NCBI GenBank assembly: GCA_038496445.1
Contig: JALMLS010000356.1
Coordinates: forward strand, 62,001 to 126,000
Length of the DNA: 64,000 nt
Direction: 5' to 3'
Source: Trichosphaerium sp. ATCC 40318
Lineage: Eukaryota; Protista; Tubulinea
The position numbers and the translations under genes are program-made. Positions within the stretch are counted from its first letter, which is position 1. Every line of letters starts with the position of its first letter. This document shows, piece by piece, positions 8,085-29,591 of this stretch. The notes below the pieces were generated by a model, which was given only the letters and a program-made list of their open reading frames with translations, made no database searches and was not told the DNA's origin.

Positions 8085-9150
8085 ATGTCCATAGTTACAT
8101 CCAAACGCACTGTACATTTGTTTTTTTAAATGAATGTTTGAATAAACTCTAACAAACACCTTGTAGATAACAGCCACAACATGCATAAATTATCATCTAG
8201 TACACCTTCCAGTTGAGCTACAGCTTGATATAATCGACATGGACTTTGAAGCGTATTTAAAATGGCCTCTACTATCGAAACAGGCTGCTTTGAACACGAG
8301 ATTTGATGCAGACCTGAATAAACATGGTAAATGGGTAAAAAAGAAAAGAACCAAAGATGTCCACAATAGACTTCATCAAACAATAACTAAAAAGAAAGGG
8401 TATTGGATAAATGGTACACGTGATGGTGAGTATAAATGTTGGCATGATAATGGGAATCTAGAAAAGCAGTGTTACTATATAAATGGTAATCTAGATGGAG
8501 AATACAAACGTTGGCATGATACTGGTCAGTTGTGGGAGAAGTGCCAATATGTTAATGGTAAACAAGAAGGAGAATACAGTCTTTGGTATACGTCCGGTAA
8601 GATGTTTAAACATGGCGTGTATGCCAACGATAAGCTGAACGGAGATGCTAAGTATTGGTATTCATCCGGCCAATTGAAAAAACACTTTTGTTTTGTCAAT
8701 GGTAAGCTTGACGGAGAGCAAAAGGAGTGGTATAGAAACGGTCAATGCAAGACTGCTCGTTTTTATGTAAATGATATACAGCATGGGGAGCATAAAGAAT
8801 GGTATGAACATGTTGGCTCAATGTTATGTCATGGTTATTATACCAATGGTGAACCTAATGGTGAGTTCAAATGGTGGTATGATAATGGTGTATTGGGAAC
8901 ACATAGTCAATATGTTAATGGTAAACTTGAAGGAGTTAGAAAGATCTATCACTATAGTGGTCAACTAAAAGCCAATTGTCAGTATGTAAATGATAACCGA
9001 GAAGGTACTTACAAAGAATGGTATAGTAATGGGAAATTGAGGACAAGGTGTAATTATCTTGGAGGAAAACTTGATGGAGAATTATTGACATGGCATATAA
9101 ATGGTGAGTTGGAGAGCTACTTGATATATGAAAACGGTTTCAAAGTCTAA
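8085..9150 (+). CDS. F-box-like + MORN-variant (YwqK-like) repeat protein
   Basis: Exon 1 MSIVTSKRT (8085-8111), intron 8112-8166 (GTACAT...CTAAC...TTGTAG), then in frame 'LVHLPVELQLDII' F-box-like motif and about 11 repeats of type 'GEYKxWYxNGQL....YVNGKL'. Confidence 0.8.
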
Positions 9151-15200: not shown

Positions 15201-16502
15201 AGATCCCAACATGCGTAAAATGTACGTTAAACAACAAAGCAGCTCTTGACGGAACACACTAAAATTGGTTAAACTAGCAAGGTAGCAGGGTTGGTACAGC
15301 AATTTGACTACCTGTCAGCTAACTGGACGAGTATGATGACATTGTTTCAACAAACTGTACACGTGGAATAAGGATACCTTCGCAACCTTTTATATTTACT
15401 TAGGTAACTACAACTGGTGATATGGGTACAATTATGAACCTAGAGCAACACAGTTTTAACAAAGTAAGCACGTTTTTCGGAGAGCTAGGAACTCGTTTAA
15501 TTAATTCATTAAAAAAACAGGTTTTCGATAAGTCCGTACTAGCTGAGATAAACGCTATATCAAACTATATTGGTTGCTATAAAGATACTCCACAAAGAGG
15601 TATTAATCTCAATATTAATGCCAAAACACTCACATTCAGAAAGATCTCAACGGGACTTCAACAAAATCAGGAAAAATGACACCAGGCCAGTGTTTATTTT
15701 ATTGTAAAGAAAGTACGTTTGCTATACTCTATTTTTCTCTTAGCATTCGCTATCACGTTTCAATAATTATACTCAATAAATTTCATAATTTGTATGTGAT
15801 ATCTTTGACATCGTATTAACTTTTTGTCTTTCTAGATGACTACGAGTATGCTGGATTACAAGATGAATCATACTGCTTTTGTGGTGATAGCTATGGTCGC
15901 TACGGAAAGCTGCAACAAGATTCTTGTGATACTCCGTGCAGTGGTAACAGCGAGCTTCAATGCGGTGGAGTTTGGGCAAACACAATCTTCCAAACAAAGG
16001 TACTAGTTTTTAGTAGCTTTTCCCTTGTTCTCTGTTAACTCTATCTCTACTTTATAGAACGTTCTTCCGAACATGATGAAGGTTAGTAAGACTTATCAAG
16101 GAGAGAATCCGATTCTTATTGTACCTACAGTCCGTACCCATCTGAAAAAAGGTAAAGAGTTCCCAACTAAAAAAGTTCATTTTTTTTCTTTAGGTGAATC
16201 ATTGACTCTAAATGCAATGGTATACGCCAAAAGTACTCCAAGCGCACCTATGCTACATATAACTAAAATTGGAGAATCTAACTATGTTACCATACCTTTC
16301 GAAGCTGTGTCATCAGGTAATAATTTGAGACAAAAAGGTTTTGTTCTGAACTTTTGTTAAAGGCCGTTTTGTATACACTGTTAGCACTGATGATTTCTCT
16401 GATGGATCATTCATGTACTATGTATCTTGCCAAGTGGATGGTGGCGCTGTATACTTTCCTGGTGATGCACCTGAAGCACAACAAACCGTTGTTGTTGAAT
16501 AG
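12207..16502 (+). CDS. Secreted glycoside-hydrolase-like TIM-barrel protein with WSC domain
   Basis: Signal peptide MASLHVVGFLVLLASVCTC; 'YAVYSFAELLGVRFY', 'RGIQPFHDFAEGPDWW', 'KMNFIGLHTYP', 'WAIPWLEDD', 'GIHWRT'. WSC motif 'YIGCYKD...YAGLQDESYCFCG...CSGN..LQCGG' at about 15560-15990. Confidence 0.7.
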
Positions 16503-16742
16503 TACATAAATAAACAATTTGAAACGTCCTACATTATATTTCGCTGTTCCTTGGTCATACCACGTGATACAGCCAAGAAAGACTACGTAGTGTTTGTGGG
16601 TTTATCTCACAAATTGAATCGTATTGTTATCGCGTAGATCAGAGCTTGGAAGGTGTTTTTATTTGTGAGAGTGCTGAATAGGTTGTTCATTGTAGCTCAC
16701 ATTTAGATTGTTTTGGACAGCTTAAAACAAACCTAGCCAACC

Positions 16743-17394
16743 ATGATTCAAGCTACAACTGCTCTAATTGCTCTTTTATTTGTTGCCAGTGCGCTTTGCG
16801 CGAATGTTAACGCCACTATATCAAAAGTAAACAGTATTGGTCCATGCAGCACTTACGAGCGTGAAAAATTAAACGAGGGCTACTTCACGTGTATGTACAA
16901 AGATCCTGTTGGTATCCCTACCATTGGTGTCGGTTTTAACCTACAAAAATCTGGAGCACGTGCCCAAATACAAGGAGTAGGCGCTGACTACGATAAAGTA
17001 CTTGTTGGTACGCGCTAAGAAAATTTCGACAACTTTTTTTATATCACGTGAAATTTGTCCCTGACTTTAGTTCCTTTTTTGTGTAGGTACCGAATGCTTG
17101 AACGACGGGCAAATAAGAACTTTGTTTAACCAAGATATTGCCACAGCATTAAGCTGCGCAAAGTCTTATGTAGGCTCAAACTTCAGCAGGCTTACAAGCT
17201 CTCAAGGATCCGCTATTGTTGATATGGCGTTTAACTTGGGTTGTCCAAGACTTGGTGGTTTTAAAAACTTGCAAGCAGCTCTTCAGTCATCACCTCCAAA
17301 TATCGCAAACGCTATTGCTGAAATGAAGGATTCCGCTTGGTGTGTACAAGTTAAGACTAGATGTACTCGCGACGTTGCTTGTATGAACAGTTAA
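16743..17394 (+). CDS. Secreted phage-type (GH24/T4-like) lysozyme
   Basis: Signal peptide; 'NEGYFTCMYKDPVGIPTIGVGFNL' (E...D..G..T catalytic motif); 'AIVDMAFNLG', 'MKDSAW..QV..R'. One intron at 17008-17086. Confidence 0.9.
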
Positions 17395-17749
17395 TACGCA
17401 AATAAAATAAATGCTTATTATGTTGGTTTTGTTTTCCGGAGTATCCTCATCAGTCATTGGTATTGAGGACAAAGGCGTTGTAAATGTCGTATAAGGTTCC
17501 ACCATACTCCAGAGTGAGTGTGTTAATACGTTTTGAATAGCGTAGTGGTTAGTACGCGACATAAACAATAGTGTACCAGTCATTTACAAACAAAAAAAGC
17601 CTGAACAAAGTAAGGTACACTCTTCGAAAGTAAGAGACACCACAGTCTTGCCTCTACCTGTTAATTACAACATATGCGATAGCACAACGTGTTGGATACT
17701 TTTCAGCGCTCGAATGCCTTCAAGGTTTATGTGGTAGTTTGGTATTTGC

Positions 17750-17759
17750 AAAAAAAAAA
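17750..17759 (-). terminator. Oligo-T Pol III terminator of the tRNA-like RNA
   Basis: Ten T on the minus strand directly after the 3' strand (CACCAC) of the terminal stem; no run of 4 or more T inside the unit. Confidence 0.7.
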
Positions 17760-17997
17760 GTGGTGATCGCATCACGTGACTTTAAATTTTATTAGTCCAG
17801 CCAGGGTTTATCTTAAACCACCAGCCGGACTGATGAAACGATGTAATTATAAACTCTTACTAGGAGTACGCTCTACCACTGAGCTACCAGGCTAACCGCC
17901 CCTTGCAGATATCACTGCAAGAGGCGTAATCGGCGCCTGAATCGGATTCGAACCAATGACCTTAAACGATGAAAGACACGTTGACTATCTGCACCAC
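17750..17997 (-). ncRNA. Candidate Pol III RNA with circularly permuted tRNA-like domain (YrlA/Y-RNA-like, or permuted pre-tRNA-Thr(AGT))
   Basis: Minus-strand order: GTGGTG...ACGTGTCTTT, AGGTC, T arm ATTGG-TTCGAAT-CCGAT, TCAGGC, 12-bp hairpin, GCCTGG, TA, D arm GCTC-AGTGGTA-GAGC, ACTC-CTAGTAA-GAGT, second hairpin, AAAGTCACGT...CACCAC, T10. Confidence 0.8.
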
Positions 17998-18019
17998 ATT
18001 AGTAGATCTGGGAGATAAC

Positions 18020-18028
18020 TTATTTAAC
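18020..18028 (-). promoter_or_regulatory. TATA-like element upstream of the tRNA-like RNA
   Basis: TTAAATAA about 23-31 nt upstream of the predicted +1 G (17997). The background is AT-rich, so this is weak on its own. Confidence 0.35.
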
Positions 18029-18639
18029 TACGAACAAATAAAAAAGAAAAAAATTGTGGTAATAACTTTCAGCTACGACTGTATTTGTAGTGAGAATAGG
18101 GTGATACCTACTGATTTTGTTAAGAAATTTTGTTTTTACACTACTGTCTGGGTGACAACTCATTCTAATATATTTCTCTGATAGCCACACAGTACGACAG
18201 ATTCAAAGAGCAAGTGACCAGTAAAATAGTTTCCTTTCTCGAACTTGTTACTATTTTGGTCTGAGCGTATAAAAATACTGTGTTGTTCAGAGAAATTTAG
18301 TTTTTTTCCATTCTATGTCAAGTCAATTCGAATATTTGGGTGTACACAGTATTCAAAAATGTCATCATGGCCACAAGACTACCAGTTCACTACTCAGGCG
18401 TCTATAGCGAGTAGCACAAAGTAGTACAAATTCTGCTGTTTCCAGAAAATAGCAAAGGTTTAGCACATGTTGTTTGCTGCCCATCTTTCGCACGTGATAA
18501 GAACAAACACATACCTTGACACTCGTATGTTTGTATCAGCACTTCCTGTATCTCAGACAAGACCGGCTTATTTAATAATCCCGAAGTTGGTTGTCAAAAC
18601 TTTATTTTATTGCCCGATGGACTCACAAACGCATCAATA

Positions 18640-19394
18640 ATGTCTACAAGTGGCATCACGTACTTGACACTTACTGAAGAAGATGCAGATGAGGCTATAG
18701 CCTTAGCTGATAGAGTTATGAGCACAAAAGAGCCAGTAATGATGGCACTTGGTCTAGCTCAGCTTCCAGAAGCTGGTCGCTCTCTTTTTGGGCACCAACG
18801 TCAAGTTTGCATTGGAAAGTCTACAATTGCCAAAGACTCAGCTACAGGGAAGGTACAATGCGTCAAAATTTGATAAAGTAGTGAGACAAGCAAACTAAAG
18901 GCGTTTTTGATCAGGTTGTTGGCGTTCGTTTCGCTGCAGATTGGGTTGACACCTCAAGTATACCTATGTTCCCTCCAGAAGCTGTAGCGTACGCAAACTT
19001 GTGGCAAAGGCATTTTGACGAGTTTTCGAATGCTCATAGCGGTATTAAGAAGCGTGGTATCTGGGCGCATTGGGTCGGCCTAACAGTTGATGTACGCTTG
19101 TTTTTATCCCTTTTTCTGACATTTAACTTACTTTTTGACTTTTAGCCTGCCTATGGGCGTAAAGGGATAGGCACTAATCTATACGCGGCGAATGCAAAGC
19201 TTTTAAAATCTCTGGGCTTCCAAAACGTTGTATGTGAAAATTCTAGTGCGTTCTCTGCAAGAGCAGCTGAAAGGGCTGGTACAGAGTTGTTTTCAAAGAC
19301 TGATTACGCTTCGTACACGTTTAATGGCGAACAACCTCTAGCTTGCGTAAAGCCACCTCATGTGTGCTTTCAAATGAGAACACTTAAGTTGTAA
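18640..19394 (+). CDS. GNAT N-acetyltransferase (arylalkylamine NAT-like)
   Basis: 'EPVMMALG', 'GLTVD|PAYGRKGIGTNL' (acetyl-CoA motif A), 'SSAFSARAAERAG'; two introns. Confidence 0.85.
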
Positions 19395-19852
19395 CAGATA
19401 ATACACTTTGTGACAAATAAACGGTTGATTACAAGTGACCAGTAAAATTGTGGTTAGGCTCTTCAAGTCAAGTCGTTAACACCACTTCTACTTGCTTATT
19501 TTGCCTGGTGATAACGAACGATCATTGTGGAACAAACAAAATTGTATTTGCTATGTGCACCCACTTGAAAGTTTAAGCTTTCCGCGAGTTTCCTGTCATT
19601 GTAGCTGTACTACACCGAAAATTGTGCGAGTTTTCTTTGTATTAACAGAATAAACTATTTTCGTACAGAGGTGGTCGCTAAACGTCTATAGCCGGGTTGT
19701 GGCGTTTAAGTTTTTGGGCCGGCTACCTATTGAAAGTTATTTTTAGGACTTCTAACTTAAGGGGGAGCAGTCCCTTAAAGTTTCATTAACTAAATTGCAG
19801 GCATTGTCATTTAAAATAATGAATTGACCACTAAGCTATCGTCTTTGAACTC

Positions 19853-20514
19853 TCATCGTCTTATATACCTTCCTTGAACACGTAGCATACCACTATCCCA
19901 CCATCTTTTAAAGTCACCTTGTAGCTTACCATTTACATAAGTACCGTGCTCATGTAGTTGCCCATTATTAAACCACACCTTATACTCTCCTTCTTTCTTA
20001 TCATTTACATAATTCTCATGTACTTTCAACAGTCCATTATCACGGTACACCTTACGCTCTCCTTCCCTTTTACCATTGATACAACACCAATGTTCATACA
20101 ATCGACCATTAGCATGCCATGTCTTATGCTCTCCTTCTTGGATACCATTCAAGTAAGTATACTCCTCTTTTACTTGACCATTAGTGTACCACCACTTGTA
20201 CTCACCATGTCGCTTACCATTCAACCAACTCTCTTGTCTTATCACATAGCCTTGTGAGTGTTCGTAGTTCTTTAACACTTTTAACCATTTCCCGTGTTTG
20301 TTAAGGTTGTAATCAAACCTTGTTGATGTTGCCGCTTGTTTTGATAGTGTAGGCCATTTTAAATACATATCAAGATCCAAATCAATTATATCAAGCTGTA
20401 GCTCTACTGGCAAGTCCAAAAGACTGTAGTAATGCGTATTAGCTGTTGTTAACTGTGAGGCATTAGGATAAAACATTTCTTTTTTGAACATACTTTGCGT
20501 TTTCTTTCTTCCAT
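19853..20514 (-). CDS. F-box-like + MORN-variant repeat protein (paralogue of 8085-9150)
   Basis: Exon 1 MEERKRK (20514-20494), intron 20493-20453, then 'LLDLPVELQLDIIDLDLDMYLKWPTLSKQAA' and about 5-6 MORN-variant repeats. Confidence 0.85.
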
Positions 20515-21130
20515 TTTTCCGGCCCCTATAAGATGCTCCTCTGGTGTTGAGTACTTTTTTTGACCAAATGGATTTTCTATGGCCCTCACATAAACCCATC
20601 GGAAAGTGCACGTGTATTTTTGTAATTCCTGCTGTGATAGCGGACAATAAGTCACCATAAACGTGTGAATATGTGATGTATGCTTTGTAAATCACTCACA
20701 AGGAAAGCTCAACAGAATAACAAAAATACTCATAGAAGCTGGCAAACTAAAATTAAAAAGTTAGATGAACCTCTTGGTTGGAACCAATAGTATAAAGCAA
20801 CGAGACTGGTTTGGAGGAAGACTTAACGTCTCGGTGGCTCAAACGTTAAGGTTTTTATATCTTGTACACGTGTTTAATGCAAAAATGGATCCTCAAATTC
20901 AGTTTTCAATAAATGCAAGTTTTTTAGGATCAGAAAAAGCCCCTTTTTCGTAAGGCGTTAGTTTTGATTGAATTTGGTTAGGGGGTTTGTGGGTGTTCGT
21001 TGCCATCGTATTATCTGTGCTTGCCACTTTGTGGAGAATATGAGAATATGATTGACGGCAATTGGTCAGCTAGATTCTTCAAACGCCTGGAATTCGAGAG
21101 AATATACAGACATTAGCTTCATTACATAAG

Positions 21131-27908: not shown

Positions 27909-29591
27909 ATGCAGAAATTAGAACAAAAACGGAAGCCAAATTACAGTACTCGGGTTTGCTCTGTTCTACAACTTCCAAATGAACTTCAGACGTACATATC
28001 TACGTTTGATCGGGAAACGTTCTCAAAGTTCCACGTGCTATCAAAAAGAGCTGCTACGAACACACATTATGATCAAAATCTGAATAAAAAAGGTGTTTGG
28101 ATTTTTTGGTATGATGATGGCTCTCGAAGGAAAACAAAAACGATGTTCAAAGGTAAGCGACATGGAGAGATGAAGAAATGGTATAAGAACGGACAGTTAT
28201 TGCTCCAGGCTTGGTACAGCGATGATGAGATGCATGGTTTGTATAACAGTTGGCATGAAGATGGACAATGTCATGAAGAATGTACTTTTGCTAGTGGCCA
28301 GGAGAATGGAGACGTAAGGCGGTGGTATGAGAACGGACAAATAATGGTACATAGTAAGTTTGTTCACGGAAAAAGGAATGGTGAGAGCAAGGTGTGGCAT
28401 GACAATGGACAACTCGAATGGGAAACCTTCTTTGTTGATGGCAAAGAAAATGGTGAATACAAAGAATGGTATGATAATGGACAGATGCATATTGTTACTG
28501 TGTATGTTGACGGCTTAAGGCAAGGCGATTTCAAAACGTGGTATAAGCACGGTCAAATAAAATCAACAAAAAAGTATGTTGACAACAAGAAGCATGGCGA
28601 AGTCAAAGAATGGTATTATGAAGGACAACTTGCACTGAATACTACATTTATTAATGGCGACCAAAATGGTGAGCGTGTGGAGTGGTATGAACATGGTCAA
28701 GTTAAAGAACAAAGTACATGGGTTGATGGGAAAAAAAATGGTTTTCACAAGCAATGGTATGAACATGGTCAAGTTAAAGAACAAAGTACATGGGTTGATG
28801 GGAAAAAAAATGGTTTTCAAAAGCAATGGTGTGAGGATGGACAACTTGATTGGCAAAGTACATGGGTTGATGGAAAACCAAATGGTTATTGCAAACAATG
28901 GCATGAGAATGGACAACTTGCTTATCAAACAATGTATGTTGATGGCAGGGAGAATGGTGAGAGCAAACAATGGTGTAAGGATGGACAACTTGTGATACAA
29001 ACTACGTATGTTGATGGCAAGCGCAATGGCGAATACAAACAATGGCATGAGAATGGACAACTTGCGATACAAACTACGTATGTTGATGGCAAGCGCAATG
29101 GCGAATACAAACAATGGCGTTGGGGTGGACAACTTGCACTACATACTACATTTATTGATGGCAACCAGAATGGTGAGCGTATGGAGTGGTATGATAATGG
29201 TCAACTTAACACACAAAGTATGTGGGTTGATGGAAAACCAAATGGTTATCACAAACAATGGGAAAAGAATGGACAACTTGTGATACAAACTACGTATGTT
29301 GATGGCAAGCGCAATGGCGAATACAAACAATGGGAAAAGAATGGACAACTTGCGATACAAACTACGTATGTTGATGGCAAGCGCAATGGCGAATACAAAG
29401 AATGGCGTTGGGGTGGACAACTTGCTTGGCAAAGTACATGGGTTGATGGAAAACCAAATGGTTATCTCAAACAATGGCATGAGAATGGACAACTTGCTTA
29501 TCAAACAATGTATGTTGATGGCAGGGAGATTGGTGAGAGCAAACAATGGTATAAGGATGGACAACCCAGAGAACCAACACTAGACTTTTGA
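27909..29591 (+). CDS. Intronless F-box-like + about 21 MORN-variant repeats
   Basis: 'VLQLPNELQTYI...LSKRAATNTHYD' is homologous to the two paralogues; 23-aa repeats; single 560-aa ORF. Confidence 0.9.
   Translation: MQKLEQKRKPNYSTRVCSVLQLPNELQTYISTFDRETFSKFHVLSKRAATNTHYDQNLNKKGVWIFWYDDGSRRKTKTMFKGKRHGEMKKWYKNGQLLLQAWYSDDEMHGLYNSWHEDGQCHEECTFASGQENGDVRRWYENGQIMVHSKFVHGKRNGESKVWHDNGQLEWETFFVDGKENGEYKEWYDNGQMHIVTVYVDGLRQGDFKTWYKHGQIKSTKKYVDNKKHGEVKEWYYEGQLALNTTFINGDQNGERVEWYEHGQVKEQSTWVDGKKNGFHKQWYEHGQVKEQSTWVDGKKNGFQKQWCEDGQLDWQSTWVDGKPNGYCKQWHENGQLAYQTMYVDGRENGESKQWCKDGQLVIQTTYVDGKRNGEYKQWHENGQLAIQTTYVDGKRNGEYKQWRWGGQLALHTTFIDGNQNGERMEWYDNGQLNTQSMWVDGKPNGYHKQWEKNGQLVIQTTYVDGKRNGEYKQWEKNGQLAIQTTYVDGKRNGEYKEWRWGGQLAWQSTWVDGKPNGYLKQWHENGQLAYQTMYVDGREIGESKQWYKDGQPREPTLDF
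28600..29565 (+). repeat. 69-bp coding tandem repeat array with near-identical units
   Basis: Units such as ACAAACTACGTATGTTGATGGCAAGCGCAATGGCGAATACAAA occur four times exactly. Confidence 0.85.

What the first reader, a model, noticed from the sequence alone, without database searches (positions are those of the whole stretch)
17750..17997. Eukaryotic Pol III-type RNA with a circularly permuted tRNA domain on a long terminal stem: a YrlA/Y-RNA-like molecule in a protist
Seen on the minus strand: the 5' GTGGTG (17997-17992) pairs with the 3' CACCAC (17765-17760), directly followed by T10. ACGTGTCTTT (17981-17972) pairs with AAAGTCACGT (17783-17774) at 9/10 positions, extended by GUC/GAU around a bulged A. 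Inside, the tRNA elements are in permuted order: variable-loop AGGTC, a canonical T arm (17957-17941), acceptor 3' strand TCAGGC (17940-17935), a 12-bp hairpin (17926-17897), acceptor 5' strand GCCTGG (17892-17887), U8-A9, and a canonical D arm (17884-17870). The G-U pairs in the arms and hairpins favour the minus strand. Established: bacterial YrlA Y RNAs have this layout (T arm, loop-closed acceptor stem, D arm, on a 5'/3' stem that binds Ro60/Rsr), whereas animal Y RNAs are Pol III transcripts without the tRNA module. Inference: this may be an unrecognised eukaryotic tRNA-mimic Y RNA linking the two. No Ro60 gene was seen in this window.
Basis: partly seen in the sequence, partly recalled or inferred. 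Interest (0 to 1): 0.95.

Follow-up and report, generated by a model that had tools for sequence, protein, structure and literature searches.

The report
Circularly permuted tRNA-Thr gene, transcribed
This 248-base unit is most likely a threonine tRNA gene whose two halves sit in swapped order. Such genes are so far reported only from a few algae and one archaeon, and this one is broken at a position not seen before, so it matters if the mature tRNA can be shown.

Summary
On the minus strand, 17997-17750 carries a T arm, a hairpin-closed acceptor stem, a D arm, an 18-bp end-to-end stem and T10. The fold has z = -5.4, and the terminal stem was matched by 16 of 5000 shuffles.

Joining 17893-17853 to 17963-17933 gives a 72-nt cloverleaf that ARAGORN calls tRNA-Thr(AGU). 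This makes it a circularly permuted tRNA gene broken at 41/42 or 42/43.

RNA contigs show it is transcribed. One carries a template-switch oligo joined at 17997, which marks the RNA 5' end. A TATA-like box lies at -30. At least three sequence variants in two organisms' runs keep the permuted order.

The Y-RNA reading fails its tests:
- YrlA scores 25.8 bits against a cut-off of 69.
- Y_RNA gives no hit.
- The anticodon arm is closed, not formed by the RNA ends.

Still open:
- No strict bulge-helix-bulge motif lies at the joint.
- Positions 1:72 are an A/G mismatch.
- No joined or circular RNA was seen.

The scan's first-stage notes list other permuted tRNA candidates on other DNA of this genome. 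These are unchecked.

The parts
18019..18027 (-). TATA-like element TTAAATAAG, at -30 to -22 from the RNA 5' end
   Evidence: Read from the sequence. The position fits the upstream TATA-like boxes described for permuted tRNA genes (PMC3978253). Function is inferred.
17964..17997 (-). 34-nt leader. Its first base, 17997, is the RNA 5' end. Bases 17997-17972 form the 5' strand of the terminal stem.
   Evidence: An X1 contig carries the 3' end of a SMART template-switch oligo (..ATCAACGCAGAGTAC+GGG) joined directly to 17997 on the minus strand. The genomic bases upstream are AAT, so this is not a strand-invasion artefact. Stem.
17933..17963 (-). tRNA 3' part: A43, variable loop AGGTC (44-48), T arm ATTGG-TTCGAAT-CCGAT, acceptor 3' strand TCAGGCG (66-72), discriminator C73
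17894..17932 (-). 39-nt intervening sequence between the acceptor 3' and 5' strands. It holds a 12-bp hairpin (17926-17897), U at -1 and no T4 run.
   Evidence: A paralogue has substitutions at 17898, 17901 and 17920, and two of them break pairs.
17853..17893 (-). tRNA 5' part: A1-GCCTGG (1-7), U8 A9, D arm GCTC-AGTGGTA-GAGC, G26, anticodon arm TACTC-CTAGTAA-GAGT (to U42). The anticodon AGT is at 17861-17859.
17840..17852 (-). 13-nt single-stranded linker after U42 (UUAUAAUUACAUC)
17786..17839 (-). Trailer hairpin: 23 pairs, irregular, G-U rich, loop AGA. It abuts the terminal stem with 2 nt between.
17760..17783 (-). 3' strand of the terminal stem (AAAGTCACGTGATGCGATCACCAC)
17750..17759 (-). 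T10 run, a Pol III-type terminator
17964..17974 (-). Direct repeat copy 1, TTTCATCGTTT, ending exactly at the A43 boundary
   Evidence: 10/11 identity to copy 2; 53/2000 shuffles score as well
17836..17846 (-). Direct repeat copy 2, TTACATCGTTT, starting 6 nt after U42

Best explanation
The unit is a transcribed, circularly permuted nuclear tRNA-Thr(AGU) gene.

Shown:
- The RNA is read from the minus strand with its 5' end at 17997. The order along the unit is a 34-nt leader, tRNA positions 43-73, a 39-nt spacer, tRNA positions 1-42, a 93-nt structured trailer, then T10.
- Contigs reach from 17997 only to 17786. The RNA 3' end was not seen.

Inferred:
- RNA polymerase III starts from the upstream TATA-like box, because the internal B box lies upstream of the A box.
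- The leader and trailer pair into an 18-bp clamp. The trailer hairpin can stack on it, holding U42 and A43 close together.
- Both flanks are cut off and U42 is ligated to A43 (or G41 to U42; the sequence cannot tell which), giving a circular intermediate.
- RNase P and tRNase Z then open the acceptor stem by removing the 39-nt spacer, and CCA is added.
- The product is a 72-nt tRNA with the eukaryotic Thr loop CUAGUAA. A34 would become inosine and A37 would become t6A (general tRNA knowledge).

The nuclease that cuts at the joint is unknown, because no strict bulge-helix-bulge (BHB) motif is there.
For: - Complete tRNA content in permuted order.
- The joined halves fold as a cloverleaf (-19.1 kcal/mol), and ARAGORN calls the product tRNA-Thr(agt).
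- These invariant or semi-invariant features are present, read from the sequence: U8, A14, G15:C48, G18G19, A21, G26/A44, U33, A37, G53:C61, T54-T55-C56-R57-A58. The leader base next to AGGTC restores the U27:A43 pair.
- The colinear Rfam tRNA model stays under its cut-off and ARAGORN finds nothing in the genomic order, as expected for a permuted gene.
- Transcription: a template-switch oligo is joined at 17997, contigs cover 17997-17786, and spliced mRNAs in the same runs show that these are RNA libraries.
- TATA-like box at -30, no T4 within 238 nt, then T10. This is the layout described for Cyanidioschyzon merolae permuted genes (PMC3978253).
- At least three sequence variants in runs of two organisms keep the permuted order. 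Their differences fall at the discriminator, in the D loop (AGTGGTA to AGTTGGTA) and in the spacer, not in tRNA stems or the anticodon loop.
- An 11-nt direct repeat flanks the joint. It looks like a relic of a duplicated intron-bearing gene, the origin proposed for permuted tRNA genes.
- Leads only, unchecked: first-stage notes list further permuted tRNA candidates (Lys, Leu, Tyr-like) on other pieces of this genome. They are broken near 41-47, some with structured trailers or closing stems.
Against: - No joined (42/43) or circular form was seen. Only assembled contigs could be laid, and these drop rare forms.
- No strict 3-4-3 BHB lies at the joint. The central helix has 3 of 4 pairs and the flanking helices have 0-1 pair.
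- The joint lies 8 nt from the terminal stem on the leader side and 69 nt on the trailer side.
- A1 faces G72, a mismatch unusual for a cytosolic elongator tRNA, and no variant differs there.
- This copy has C73 where the other variants have U73.
- The leader and trailer are much longer than in known permuted genes.
- Whether a colinear tRNA-Thr(AGU) gene exists elsewhere in the genome is unknown.
Confidence: 0.6

Rival explanations
1. A stable tRNA-mimic non-coding RNA, Y-RNA/YrlA-like or another RNP scaffold. The ~238-nt transcript would persist. The terminal stem or trailer hairpin would bind a protein such as Ro60 or La, and the loop-closed tRNA-like domain would recruit a tRNA-binding factor.
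For: - The long, significant terminal stem followed by oligo-U.
- The acceptor stem is closed by a hairpin.
- The weak YrlA match covers the T arm, acceptor and D arm.
- The precursor-order RNA is the only form seen in the contigs.
- The A1/G72 mismatch and the lack of a BHB are harmless for a mimic.
Against: - YrlA scores 25.8 bits against a gathering score of 69, and Y_RNA gives no match at E <= 10.
- A full anticodon arm with an exact Thr loop is kept, which a mimic does not need and YrlA lacks.
- The acceptor stem has full tRNA length, with U at -1.
- The closing hairpin tolerates pair-breaking changes.
- In X2 the 3' strand of the terminal stem has depth ~0.5 against ~50 for the leader.
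- No Ro60/TROVE gene is known here.
Confidence: 0.12
2. A transcribed relic with no function. A tandem duplication or rearrangement of an intron-bearing tRNA-Thr gene left a 3' part next to a 5' part behind a fortuitous promoter, and the RNA is simply degraded.
For: - The direct repeat at the joint points to a duplication origin.
- The A1/G72 mismatch, C73 in this copy, and the missing BHB.
- No mature product was seen.
Against: - A clean Pol III unit: TATA-like box at -30, a defined 5' end, no internal T4, and T10.
- All tRNA stems and invariant bases are intact.
- At least three variants keep the arrangement, with changes only at tolerant sites.
- An end-to-end stem found in about 0.1-0.3% of controls is not expected in a relic.
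- In X2 the word depth is comparable to that of neighbouring mRNAs. Such depth is only a rough measure of expression.
Confidence: 0.2
3. A two-piece tRNA. RNase P and tRNase Z open the acceptor stem, and the two resulting RNAs stay together through the acceptor stem and the 18-bp clamp without ligation. The clamp would project where a class II variable arm does.
For: - The clamp and trailer hairpin leave the body at the anticodon-stem/variable-loop boundary, the one place where tRNAs tolerate an extra arm.
- No BHB is needed.
Against: - About 127 extra nucleotides are far larger than any natural variable arm, and unlikely to fit the ribosome (established tRNA structure knowledge).
- No data support it.
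Confidence: 0.05

Closest known systems
Circularly permuted tRNA genes of Cyanidioschyzon merolae, Ostreococcus/Micromonas, the Bigelowiella natans nucleomorph and Thermofilum pendens (Soma 2007; Maruyama 2010; Chan 2011; review PMC3978253)
   Same: - The 3' part lies upstream of the 5' part on one strand.
- An intervening sequence sits at the acceptor ends; 39 nt is within the known 1-74 range.
- An upstream TATA-like box and a downstream T stretch, with A and B boxes in inverted order.
- CCA is not encoded.
- C. merolae even has a permuted Thr(AGT) gene.
   Different: - The junction is at 41/42-42/43, at the anticodon-stem/variable-loop boundary. Known types are 15/16, 20/21, 37/38, 50/51 and 59/60.
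- No strict BHB lies at the joint.
- The 34-nt leader and 93-nt trailer form an 18-bp clamp plus a 23-bp hairpin.
- A1/G72 mismatch.
- The host lineage is not established, but earlier notes call it amoeba-like rather than algal.
- The circular intermediate has not been shown.
Bacterial YrlA Y RNAs (Rfam RF02553; structure paper 10.1101/312249)
   Same: The order T arm, loop-closed acceptor stem, D arm, carried on a stem made by the RNA's 5' and 3' ends; an L-shape is possible.
   Different: - In YrlA the end-to-end stem replaces the anticodon stem and carries the Ro60/Rsr site, and there is no anticodon loop.
- Here a closed, canonical anticodon arm is present and the end stem leaves at 42/43.
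- The score is far below the family cut-off.
- This is a eukaryotic Pol III unit with no known Ro60 partner.
Split tRNAs of Nanoarchaeum equitans
   Same: Long complementary flanks bring a 5' part and a 3' part together for cutting and ligation.
   Different: - There the halves are separate transcripts.
- There the helix abuts a BHB at the joint.
- Here there is a single transcript, and the helix is 8 and 69 nt away from the joint.

Membership tests
Circularly permuted tRNA gene | The 3' part of a tRNA lies upstream of its 5' part on the same strand, separated by an intervening sequence at the acceptor ends | tested here: met
   43-73 at 17963-17933, spacer at 17932-17894, 1-42 at 17893-17853
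Circularly permuted tRNA gene | The joined parts give a canonical cloverleaf with eukaryotic consensus nucleotides | tested here: met
   72 nt, cloverleaf MFE, ARAGORN calls it tRNA-Thr(agt). The invariant bases are present. The exception is the A1/G72 mismatch.
Circularly permuted tRNA gene | One transcription unit: an upstream TATA-like element, a downstream T stretch, and no terminator inside | tested here: met
   TTAAATAAG at -30..-22, T10, and no T4 in 238 nt. The RNA 5' end is at 17997, and contigs run across 3' part, spacer and 5' part.
Circularly permuted tRNA gene | A bulge-helix-bulge motif (strict or relaxed) formed by leader and trailer at the junction | tested here: inconclusive
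   A strict 3-4-3 motif is absent at 41/42-42/43: central helix 3/4 or 2/4, flanking helices 0-1 pair. The best BHB-like site in the scan (cuts after 17849 and before 17977) is expected about 0.2 times by chance and would leave 18 extra nt. Relaxed forms cannot be excluded.
Circularly permuted tRNA gene | A circular intermediate and a mature colinear tRNA with CCA | not testable with these tools
Only assembled contigs were available.
Circularly permuted tRNA gene | A junction at one of the described positions (types I-V) | tested here: not met
   The junction is at 41/42 or 42/43. Known types are 20/21, 37/38, 50/51, 59/60 and 15/16. This sets the type, not membership.
YrlA / Y RNA | Reaches the Rfam gathering score of YrlA (69 bits) or matches Y_RNA | tested here: not met
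   YrlA 25.8 bits on model columns 27-81 only; no Y_RNA match at E <= 10
YrlA / Y RNA | The anticodon-equivalent stem is formed by the 5' and 3' ends and leads to the Ro60-binding helix | tested here: not met
   A closed anticodon hairpin lies at 17868-17853, and the end stem leaves between positions 42 and 43. YrlA layout taken.
YrlA / Y RNA | A Ro60/Rsr (TROVE) protein partner encoded nearby or in the genome | not tested
   Pfam scans of the 13 longest ORFs in the window and two lysozyme exons gave no TROVE domain. The rest of the genome was not available. No note in the scan mentions Ro60.
YrlA / Y RNA | A stable full-length RNA | tested here: inconclusive
   Contigs cover 17997-17786. In X2 the depth is ~50 over the leader and ~0.5 over 17712-17812. 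Contig depth is a poor measure.
Colinear tRNA gene (Rfam RF00005) | Reaches the gathering score in genomic order | tested here: not met
   26.8 bits against 29, using the 5' part plus a false T arm. ARAGORN finds 0 genes in the window.

The most novel reading that the evidence does not exclude
A heterotrophic, amoeba-like protist carries a family of Pol III genes for circularly permuted tRNAs. All would be broken at the anticodon-stem/variable-loop boundary. They would mature by an end-joining route that does not use a bulge-helix-bulge motif and instead relies on a long leader-trailer clamp and a structured trailer. This would be the first permuted tRNA system outside algae and archaea, and a new processing logic.
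Probability: 0.35. Interest if true: 0.8.

Novelty: new variant of a known kind. Interest (0 to 1): 0.6.

Why it matters
In the literature held here, up to a 2026 review, permuted tRNA genes are reported only from red and green algae, a green-algal nucleomorph and one archaeon. Their junctions carry bulge-helix-bulge motifs.

A transcribed permuted tRNA-Thr gene in what earlier notes call an amoeba-like genome would do three things:
- It would widen the distribution.
- It would add a junction type, 42/43, where the backbone break sits at the spot that tolerates an extra arm.
- It would pose a clear question: which nuclease and ligase join ends that are not presented in a bulge-helix-bulge?

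First-stage notes also report a recombinase element inserted inside a tRNA gene of the same genome. That would allow a test of the old idea that disrupted tRNA genes escape integrating elements.

Practically, tRNAscan-type annotation will miss such genes and under-count the tRNA set.

Tried and rejected
- ARAGORN and the Rfam gathering scan on the window found nothing, as expected for a permuted gene.
- An Rfam E-value scan of the whole window found no second tRNA-like or YrlA-like unit.
- Two exact-pattern scans of metagenome contigs gave 0 hits, so no orthologues for covariation. One pattern was T arm, acceptor, spacer, acceptor, D arm. The other was the anticodon arm.
- Exact-protein look-ups of neighbouring ORFs, meant to fetch a syntenic contig, found nothing on record.
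The lineage therefore stays undetermined.
- Leader against 5' part and trailer against 3' part show no residual homology, so the flanks are not recognisable decayed tRNA halves.
- The duplex of the leader against the whole trailer is not significant (168/1000 shuffles). Only the position-specific end-to-end test is.
- The absence of T4 within the unit is weak evidence: 10-13% of windows of that length lack it.
- Hammerhead or other ribozymes: no Rfam match.
- Spliceosomal back-splicing: the GU/AG positions would delete tRNA bases, so it was rejected from the sequence.
- An acceptor-like CCUGGCU in the trailer gives an A1:U72 pair and 6/7 pairs overall. About one such site is expected by chance, so it was dropped.
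- A 134-nt insert in X3/X4 (17980-17848) has adapters on both sides. It lies 1-3 nt from the best BHB-like site, but it comes from one sample at low depth, so I treat it as a possible PCR duplicate.
- The contig ends at 17963 are explained by the paralogue difference at 17933 (k-mer branch), not by a joint.

Full report
**1. The observation**

I read the minus strand from 17997 to 17750 and indexed it.
- GTGGTG (17997-17992) pairs with CACCAC (17765-17760), followed directly by T10 (17759-17750).
- ACGTGTCTTT pairs with AAAGTCACGT at 9 of 10 positions.
- AGGTC lies at 17962-17958.
- The T arm is 17957-17941 and contains the exact B box GGTTCGAATCC.
- TCAGGCG is 17940-17934.
- The 12-bp hairpin is 17926-17897.
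- AGCCTGG is 17893-17887, followed by U8-A9.
- The D arm is 17884-17870 and contains the exact A box.

Chance does not explain this.
- The 248-nt RNA folds at -86.7 kcal/mol against -62.1 +/- 4.6 for shuffles (z = -5.4).
- The plus strand folds 11 kcal/mol worse.
- The cloverleaf-constrained fold has 8 G-U pairs among 73 pairs.
- Each box occurs once in the 64-kb window.
- The end-to-end duplex, tested position-specifically, is reached by 16 of 5000 shuffles and 5 of 5000 genomic controls. A looser test against the whole trailer was not significant.

**2. What the main note left out**

Right after the D arm and G26 comes a complete anticodon arm, TACTC-CTAGTAA-GAGT (17868-17853). Its loop is C32-U33-A34-G35-U36-A37-A38, the standard loop of eukaryotic tRNA-Thr(AGU).

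The base in the leader next to AGGTC is an A (17963). It pairs with U27.

Joining 17893-17853 (positions 1-42) to 17963-17933 (positions 43-73) gives a 72-nt sequence. It folds as a cloverleaf, and ARAGORN calls it tRNA-Thr(agt). It carries U8, A14, G15:C48, G18G19, A21, G26/A44, U33, A37, G53:C61 and T54-T55-C56-G57-A58.

U42 and the last leader base are both U. The joint is therefore equally well written 41/42 or 42/43.

In genomic order ARAGORN and Rfam find no tRNA. The colinear tRNA model reaches only 26.8 bits, by borrowing a false T arm from the trailer. So this is a whole tRNA in circularly permuted order. It is not a T-acceptor-D module on a stem.

**3. The rest of the unit**

The spacer between C73 and A1 is 39 nt. 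It has U at -1, no T4 run, and the 12-bp hairpin.

After U42 come four parts:
- a 13-nt linker;
- a 23-pair irregular hairpin (17839-17786), G-U rich;
- two unpaired bases;
- the 3' strand of the terminal stem.

The trailer hairpin can stack on the 18-bp terminal stem. The tRNA body is then tied to a long rod by single-stranded linkers of 8 nt on the leader side and 13 nt on the trailer side.

An 11-nt direct repeat, TT(T/A)CATCGTTT, ends exactly at the A43 boundary in the leader. It recurs 6 nt after U42 in the trailer (53 of 2000 shuffles score as well). This is what a duplication of a gene with a ~17-nt insert at 42/43 would leave. Otherwise the leader and trailer show no homology to the tRNA halves.

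**4. Transcription**

Four public runs were laid on 16500-19500. They contain spliced mRNAs with GT..AG joints at 17006/17086 and 18850/18913, so they are RNA libraries.

- In X1 an 82-nt contig carries 18 letters that are the reverse complement of ...ATCAACGCAGAGTAC+GGG. From my own knowledge this is the 3' end of a SMART template-switch oligo. It is joined directly to 17997 on the minus strand. The genomic bases upstream are AAT, not GGG, so this marks an RNA 5' end and not strand invasion.
It lies 22-30 nt downstream of TTAAATAAG (18027-18019).
- Contigs run without a break through leader, 3' part, spacer, 5' part and trailer down to 17786.
- No T4 occurs in the 238 nt before T10. This is weak evidence, since 10-13% of windows of that length lack T4.
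- The B box lies 68 nt upstream of the A box. Initiation therefore probably depends on the upstream element, as proposed for C. merolae (PMC3978253).

**5. Variants**

The runs hold at least three versions.
- The window sequence.
- A version with U73 and D loop AGTTGGTA. It is otherwise identical over 17980-17848 and comes from organism B, whose other contigs differ from the window by about 0.3-2.4%.
- A version with those two changes plus substitutions at 17898, 17901 and 17920 in the spacer hairpin. It is seen in runs of both organisms.

All three keep the permuted order. No change falls in a tRNA stem or in the anticodon loop. Two of the three hairpin changes break pairs, so the hairpin that closes the acceptor stem is not structurally constrained. 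That fits a discarded spacer. The numbers are small and this is suggestive only.

**6. How it most likely works**

The pathway shown for algal permuted genes has three steps (PMC3978253):
- a splicing endonuclease cuts leader and trailer at a bulge-helix-bulge (BHB) motif, and a ligase joins the ends into a circle;
- RNase P and tRNase Z open the acceptor loop;
- CCA is added.

The second half is plausible here. The acceptor plus T arm has standard length, U is at -1, and the bases after C73 are not CCA.

The first half is the weak point. I scanned every pair of cut sites for a 3-4-3 BHB.
- At 42/43 the central helix has 3 of 4 pairs and the flanking helices have 0-1 pair.
- At 41/42 the central helix has 2 of 4 pairs.
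- The best BHB-like site would cut after 17849 and before 17977. About 0.2 such sites are expected by chance, and it would leave 18 extra nucleotides.

So the cutting enzyme is either very relaxed in its demands, as proposed for C. merolae, or different. I infer that the clamp and the stacked trailer hairpin serve to hold the two ends together.

A 134-nt insert flanked by adapters in X3/X4 spans 17980-17848. In X2, depth falls from ~50 over the leader to ~0.5 over the distal trailer. Both hint at 3'-shortened species. However, one sample and assembler word depths cannot carry that claim.

**7. What counts against a working tRNA**

- A1 faces G72, and no variant differs at either position.
- This copy has C73 where the others have U73.
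- No joined or circular form was seen. The X1 graph shows a single path into 17964-17934, so that small cDNA set holds no detectable joined form. A poly(A)-type cDNA library would not be expected to hold one.
- I could not check whether colinear Thr(AGU) genes exist elsewhere in the genome.

**8. The Y-RNA reading**

- YrlA scores 25.8 bits against a gathering score of 69, on model columns 27-81 only. Those columns are the parts any tRNA shares.
- Y_RNA gives no match at E <= 10.
- In YrlA the anticodon-equivalent stem is made by the RNA's ends and leads to the Ro60 site. Most YrlA acceptor stems are poor RNase P substrates (10.1101/312249). Here the anticodon arm is a closed hairpin with a perfect Thr loop, and the end stem leaves between positions 42 and 43.
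- No TROVE gene was seen among the ORFs I scanned. The genome as a whole could not be searched.

I keep this reading at about 0.12. The full-order RNA is the only form actually observed, and the terminal stem is real.

**9. Lineage and novelty**

I could not name the organism.
- The nearest homologues of a neighbouring LRR protein are MMETSP marine-protist transcripts at 52-62% identity.
- The MORN_2 proteins of the window resemble giant-virus clusters.
- First-stage notes call the genome amoeba-like.

The literature held here reports permuted tRNA genes only from red and green algae, the B. natans nucleomorph and Thermofilum. Junctions are at 15/16, 20/21, 37/38, 50/51 and 59/60.

The same first-stage scan lists further permuted candidates on other DNA of this genome. 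These are Lys(UUU) at 41/42, Lys in the variable loop, Leu(UAG) in the variable arm, and a Tyr-like gene with its own closing stem. It also notes structured trailers before Pol III terminators. I could not read those loci, so they are leads and not support. If they hold up, the break point near 41-47 and the clamp are features of a family.

**10. Verdict**

| Reading | Confidence |
|---|---|
| Transcribed, circularly permuted tRNA-Thr(AGU) gene; new junction type, unusually long structured flanks, maturation not yet shown | 0.6 |
| Transcribed relic | 0.2 |
| Stable tRNA-mimic RNA | 0.12 |
| Two-piece tRNA | 0.05 |

Its Pol III and permuted-tRNA-domain claims are supported. Its Y-RNA identity is not.

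Noticed in passing
window 17484-17563 (+): An 80-nt element with a tRNA-like D arm (TAGCGTAGTGGTTAGTACGC). It matches highly expressed contigs (X2 bin depth up to ~700) whose flanks differ from the window. One context continues into a T-arm motif (..GCTGTGGGTTCGATCCCC). It looks like a repeated tRNA-related module or another disrupted tRNA family. No Rfam match.
   Followed up: partly
window 17570-17621 (+): A hairpin with an 8-bp terminal stem (AGTGTACC/GGTACACT) and a CUGA box. It gives a weak SNORD72-like match of 27.4 bits against 43. There is no clear C box.
   Followed up: partly
window 16743-17417 (+): A gene for a secreted protein with a signal-peptide-like start and a weak Phage_lysozyme (GH24) match in exon 2. 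Its 79-nt GT..AG intron (17007-17085) is confirmed by spliced contigs, and an A-rich tail follows 17417. It ends about 330 bp from the tRNA unit, in convergent orientation.
   Followed up: partly
window 18639-19012 (+): A transcribed gene with a 62-nt GT..AG intron (18851-18912), seen in runs of organism B.
   Followed up: no
window 8239-9150, 19853-20695, 27909-29591: Three ORFs made of MORN_2 repeats. The 560-aa one is nearest to Atlas clusters of MORN_2/F-box proteins from Nucleocytoviricota.
   Followed up: partly
window 17848-17980 (-): In X3 and X4 (one sample), a 134-nt insert is flanked by Illumina adapters on both sides. It runs from C18 of the leader to 5 nt past U42. This is either a defined RNA species lacking the trailer or PCR duplicates of one fragment.
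   Followed up: partly
window 17800-17806 (-) within the trailer hairpin: CCUGGCU can pair with the acceptor 5' strand AGCCUGG at 6 of 7 positions, including an A1:U72 pair. This is why the colinear Rfam tRNA model scores 26.8 bits. About one such site is expected by chance.
   Followed up: yes
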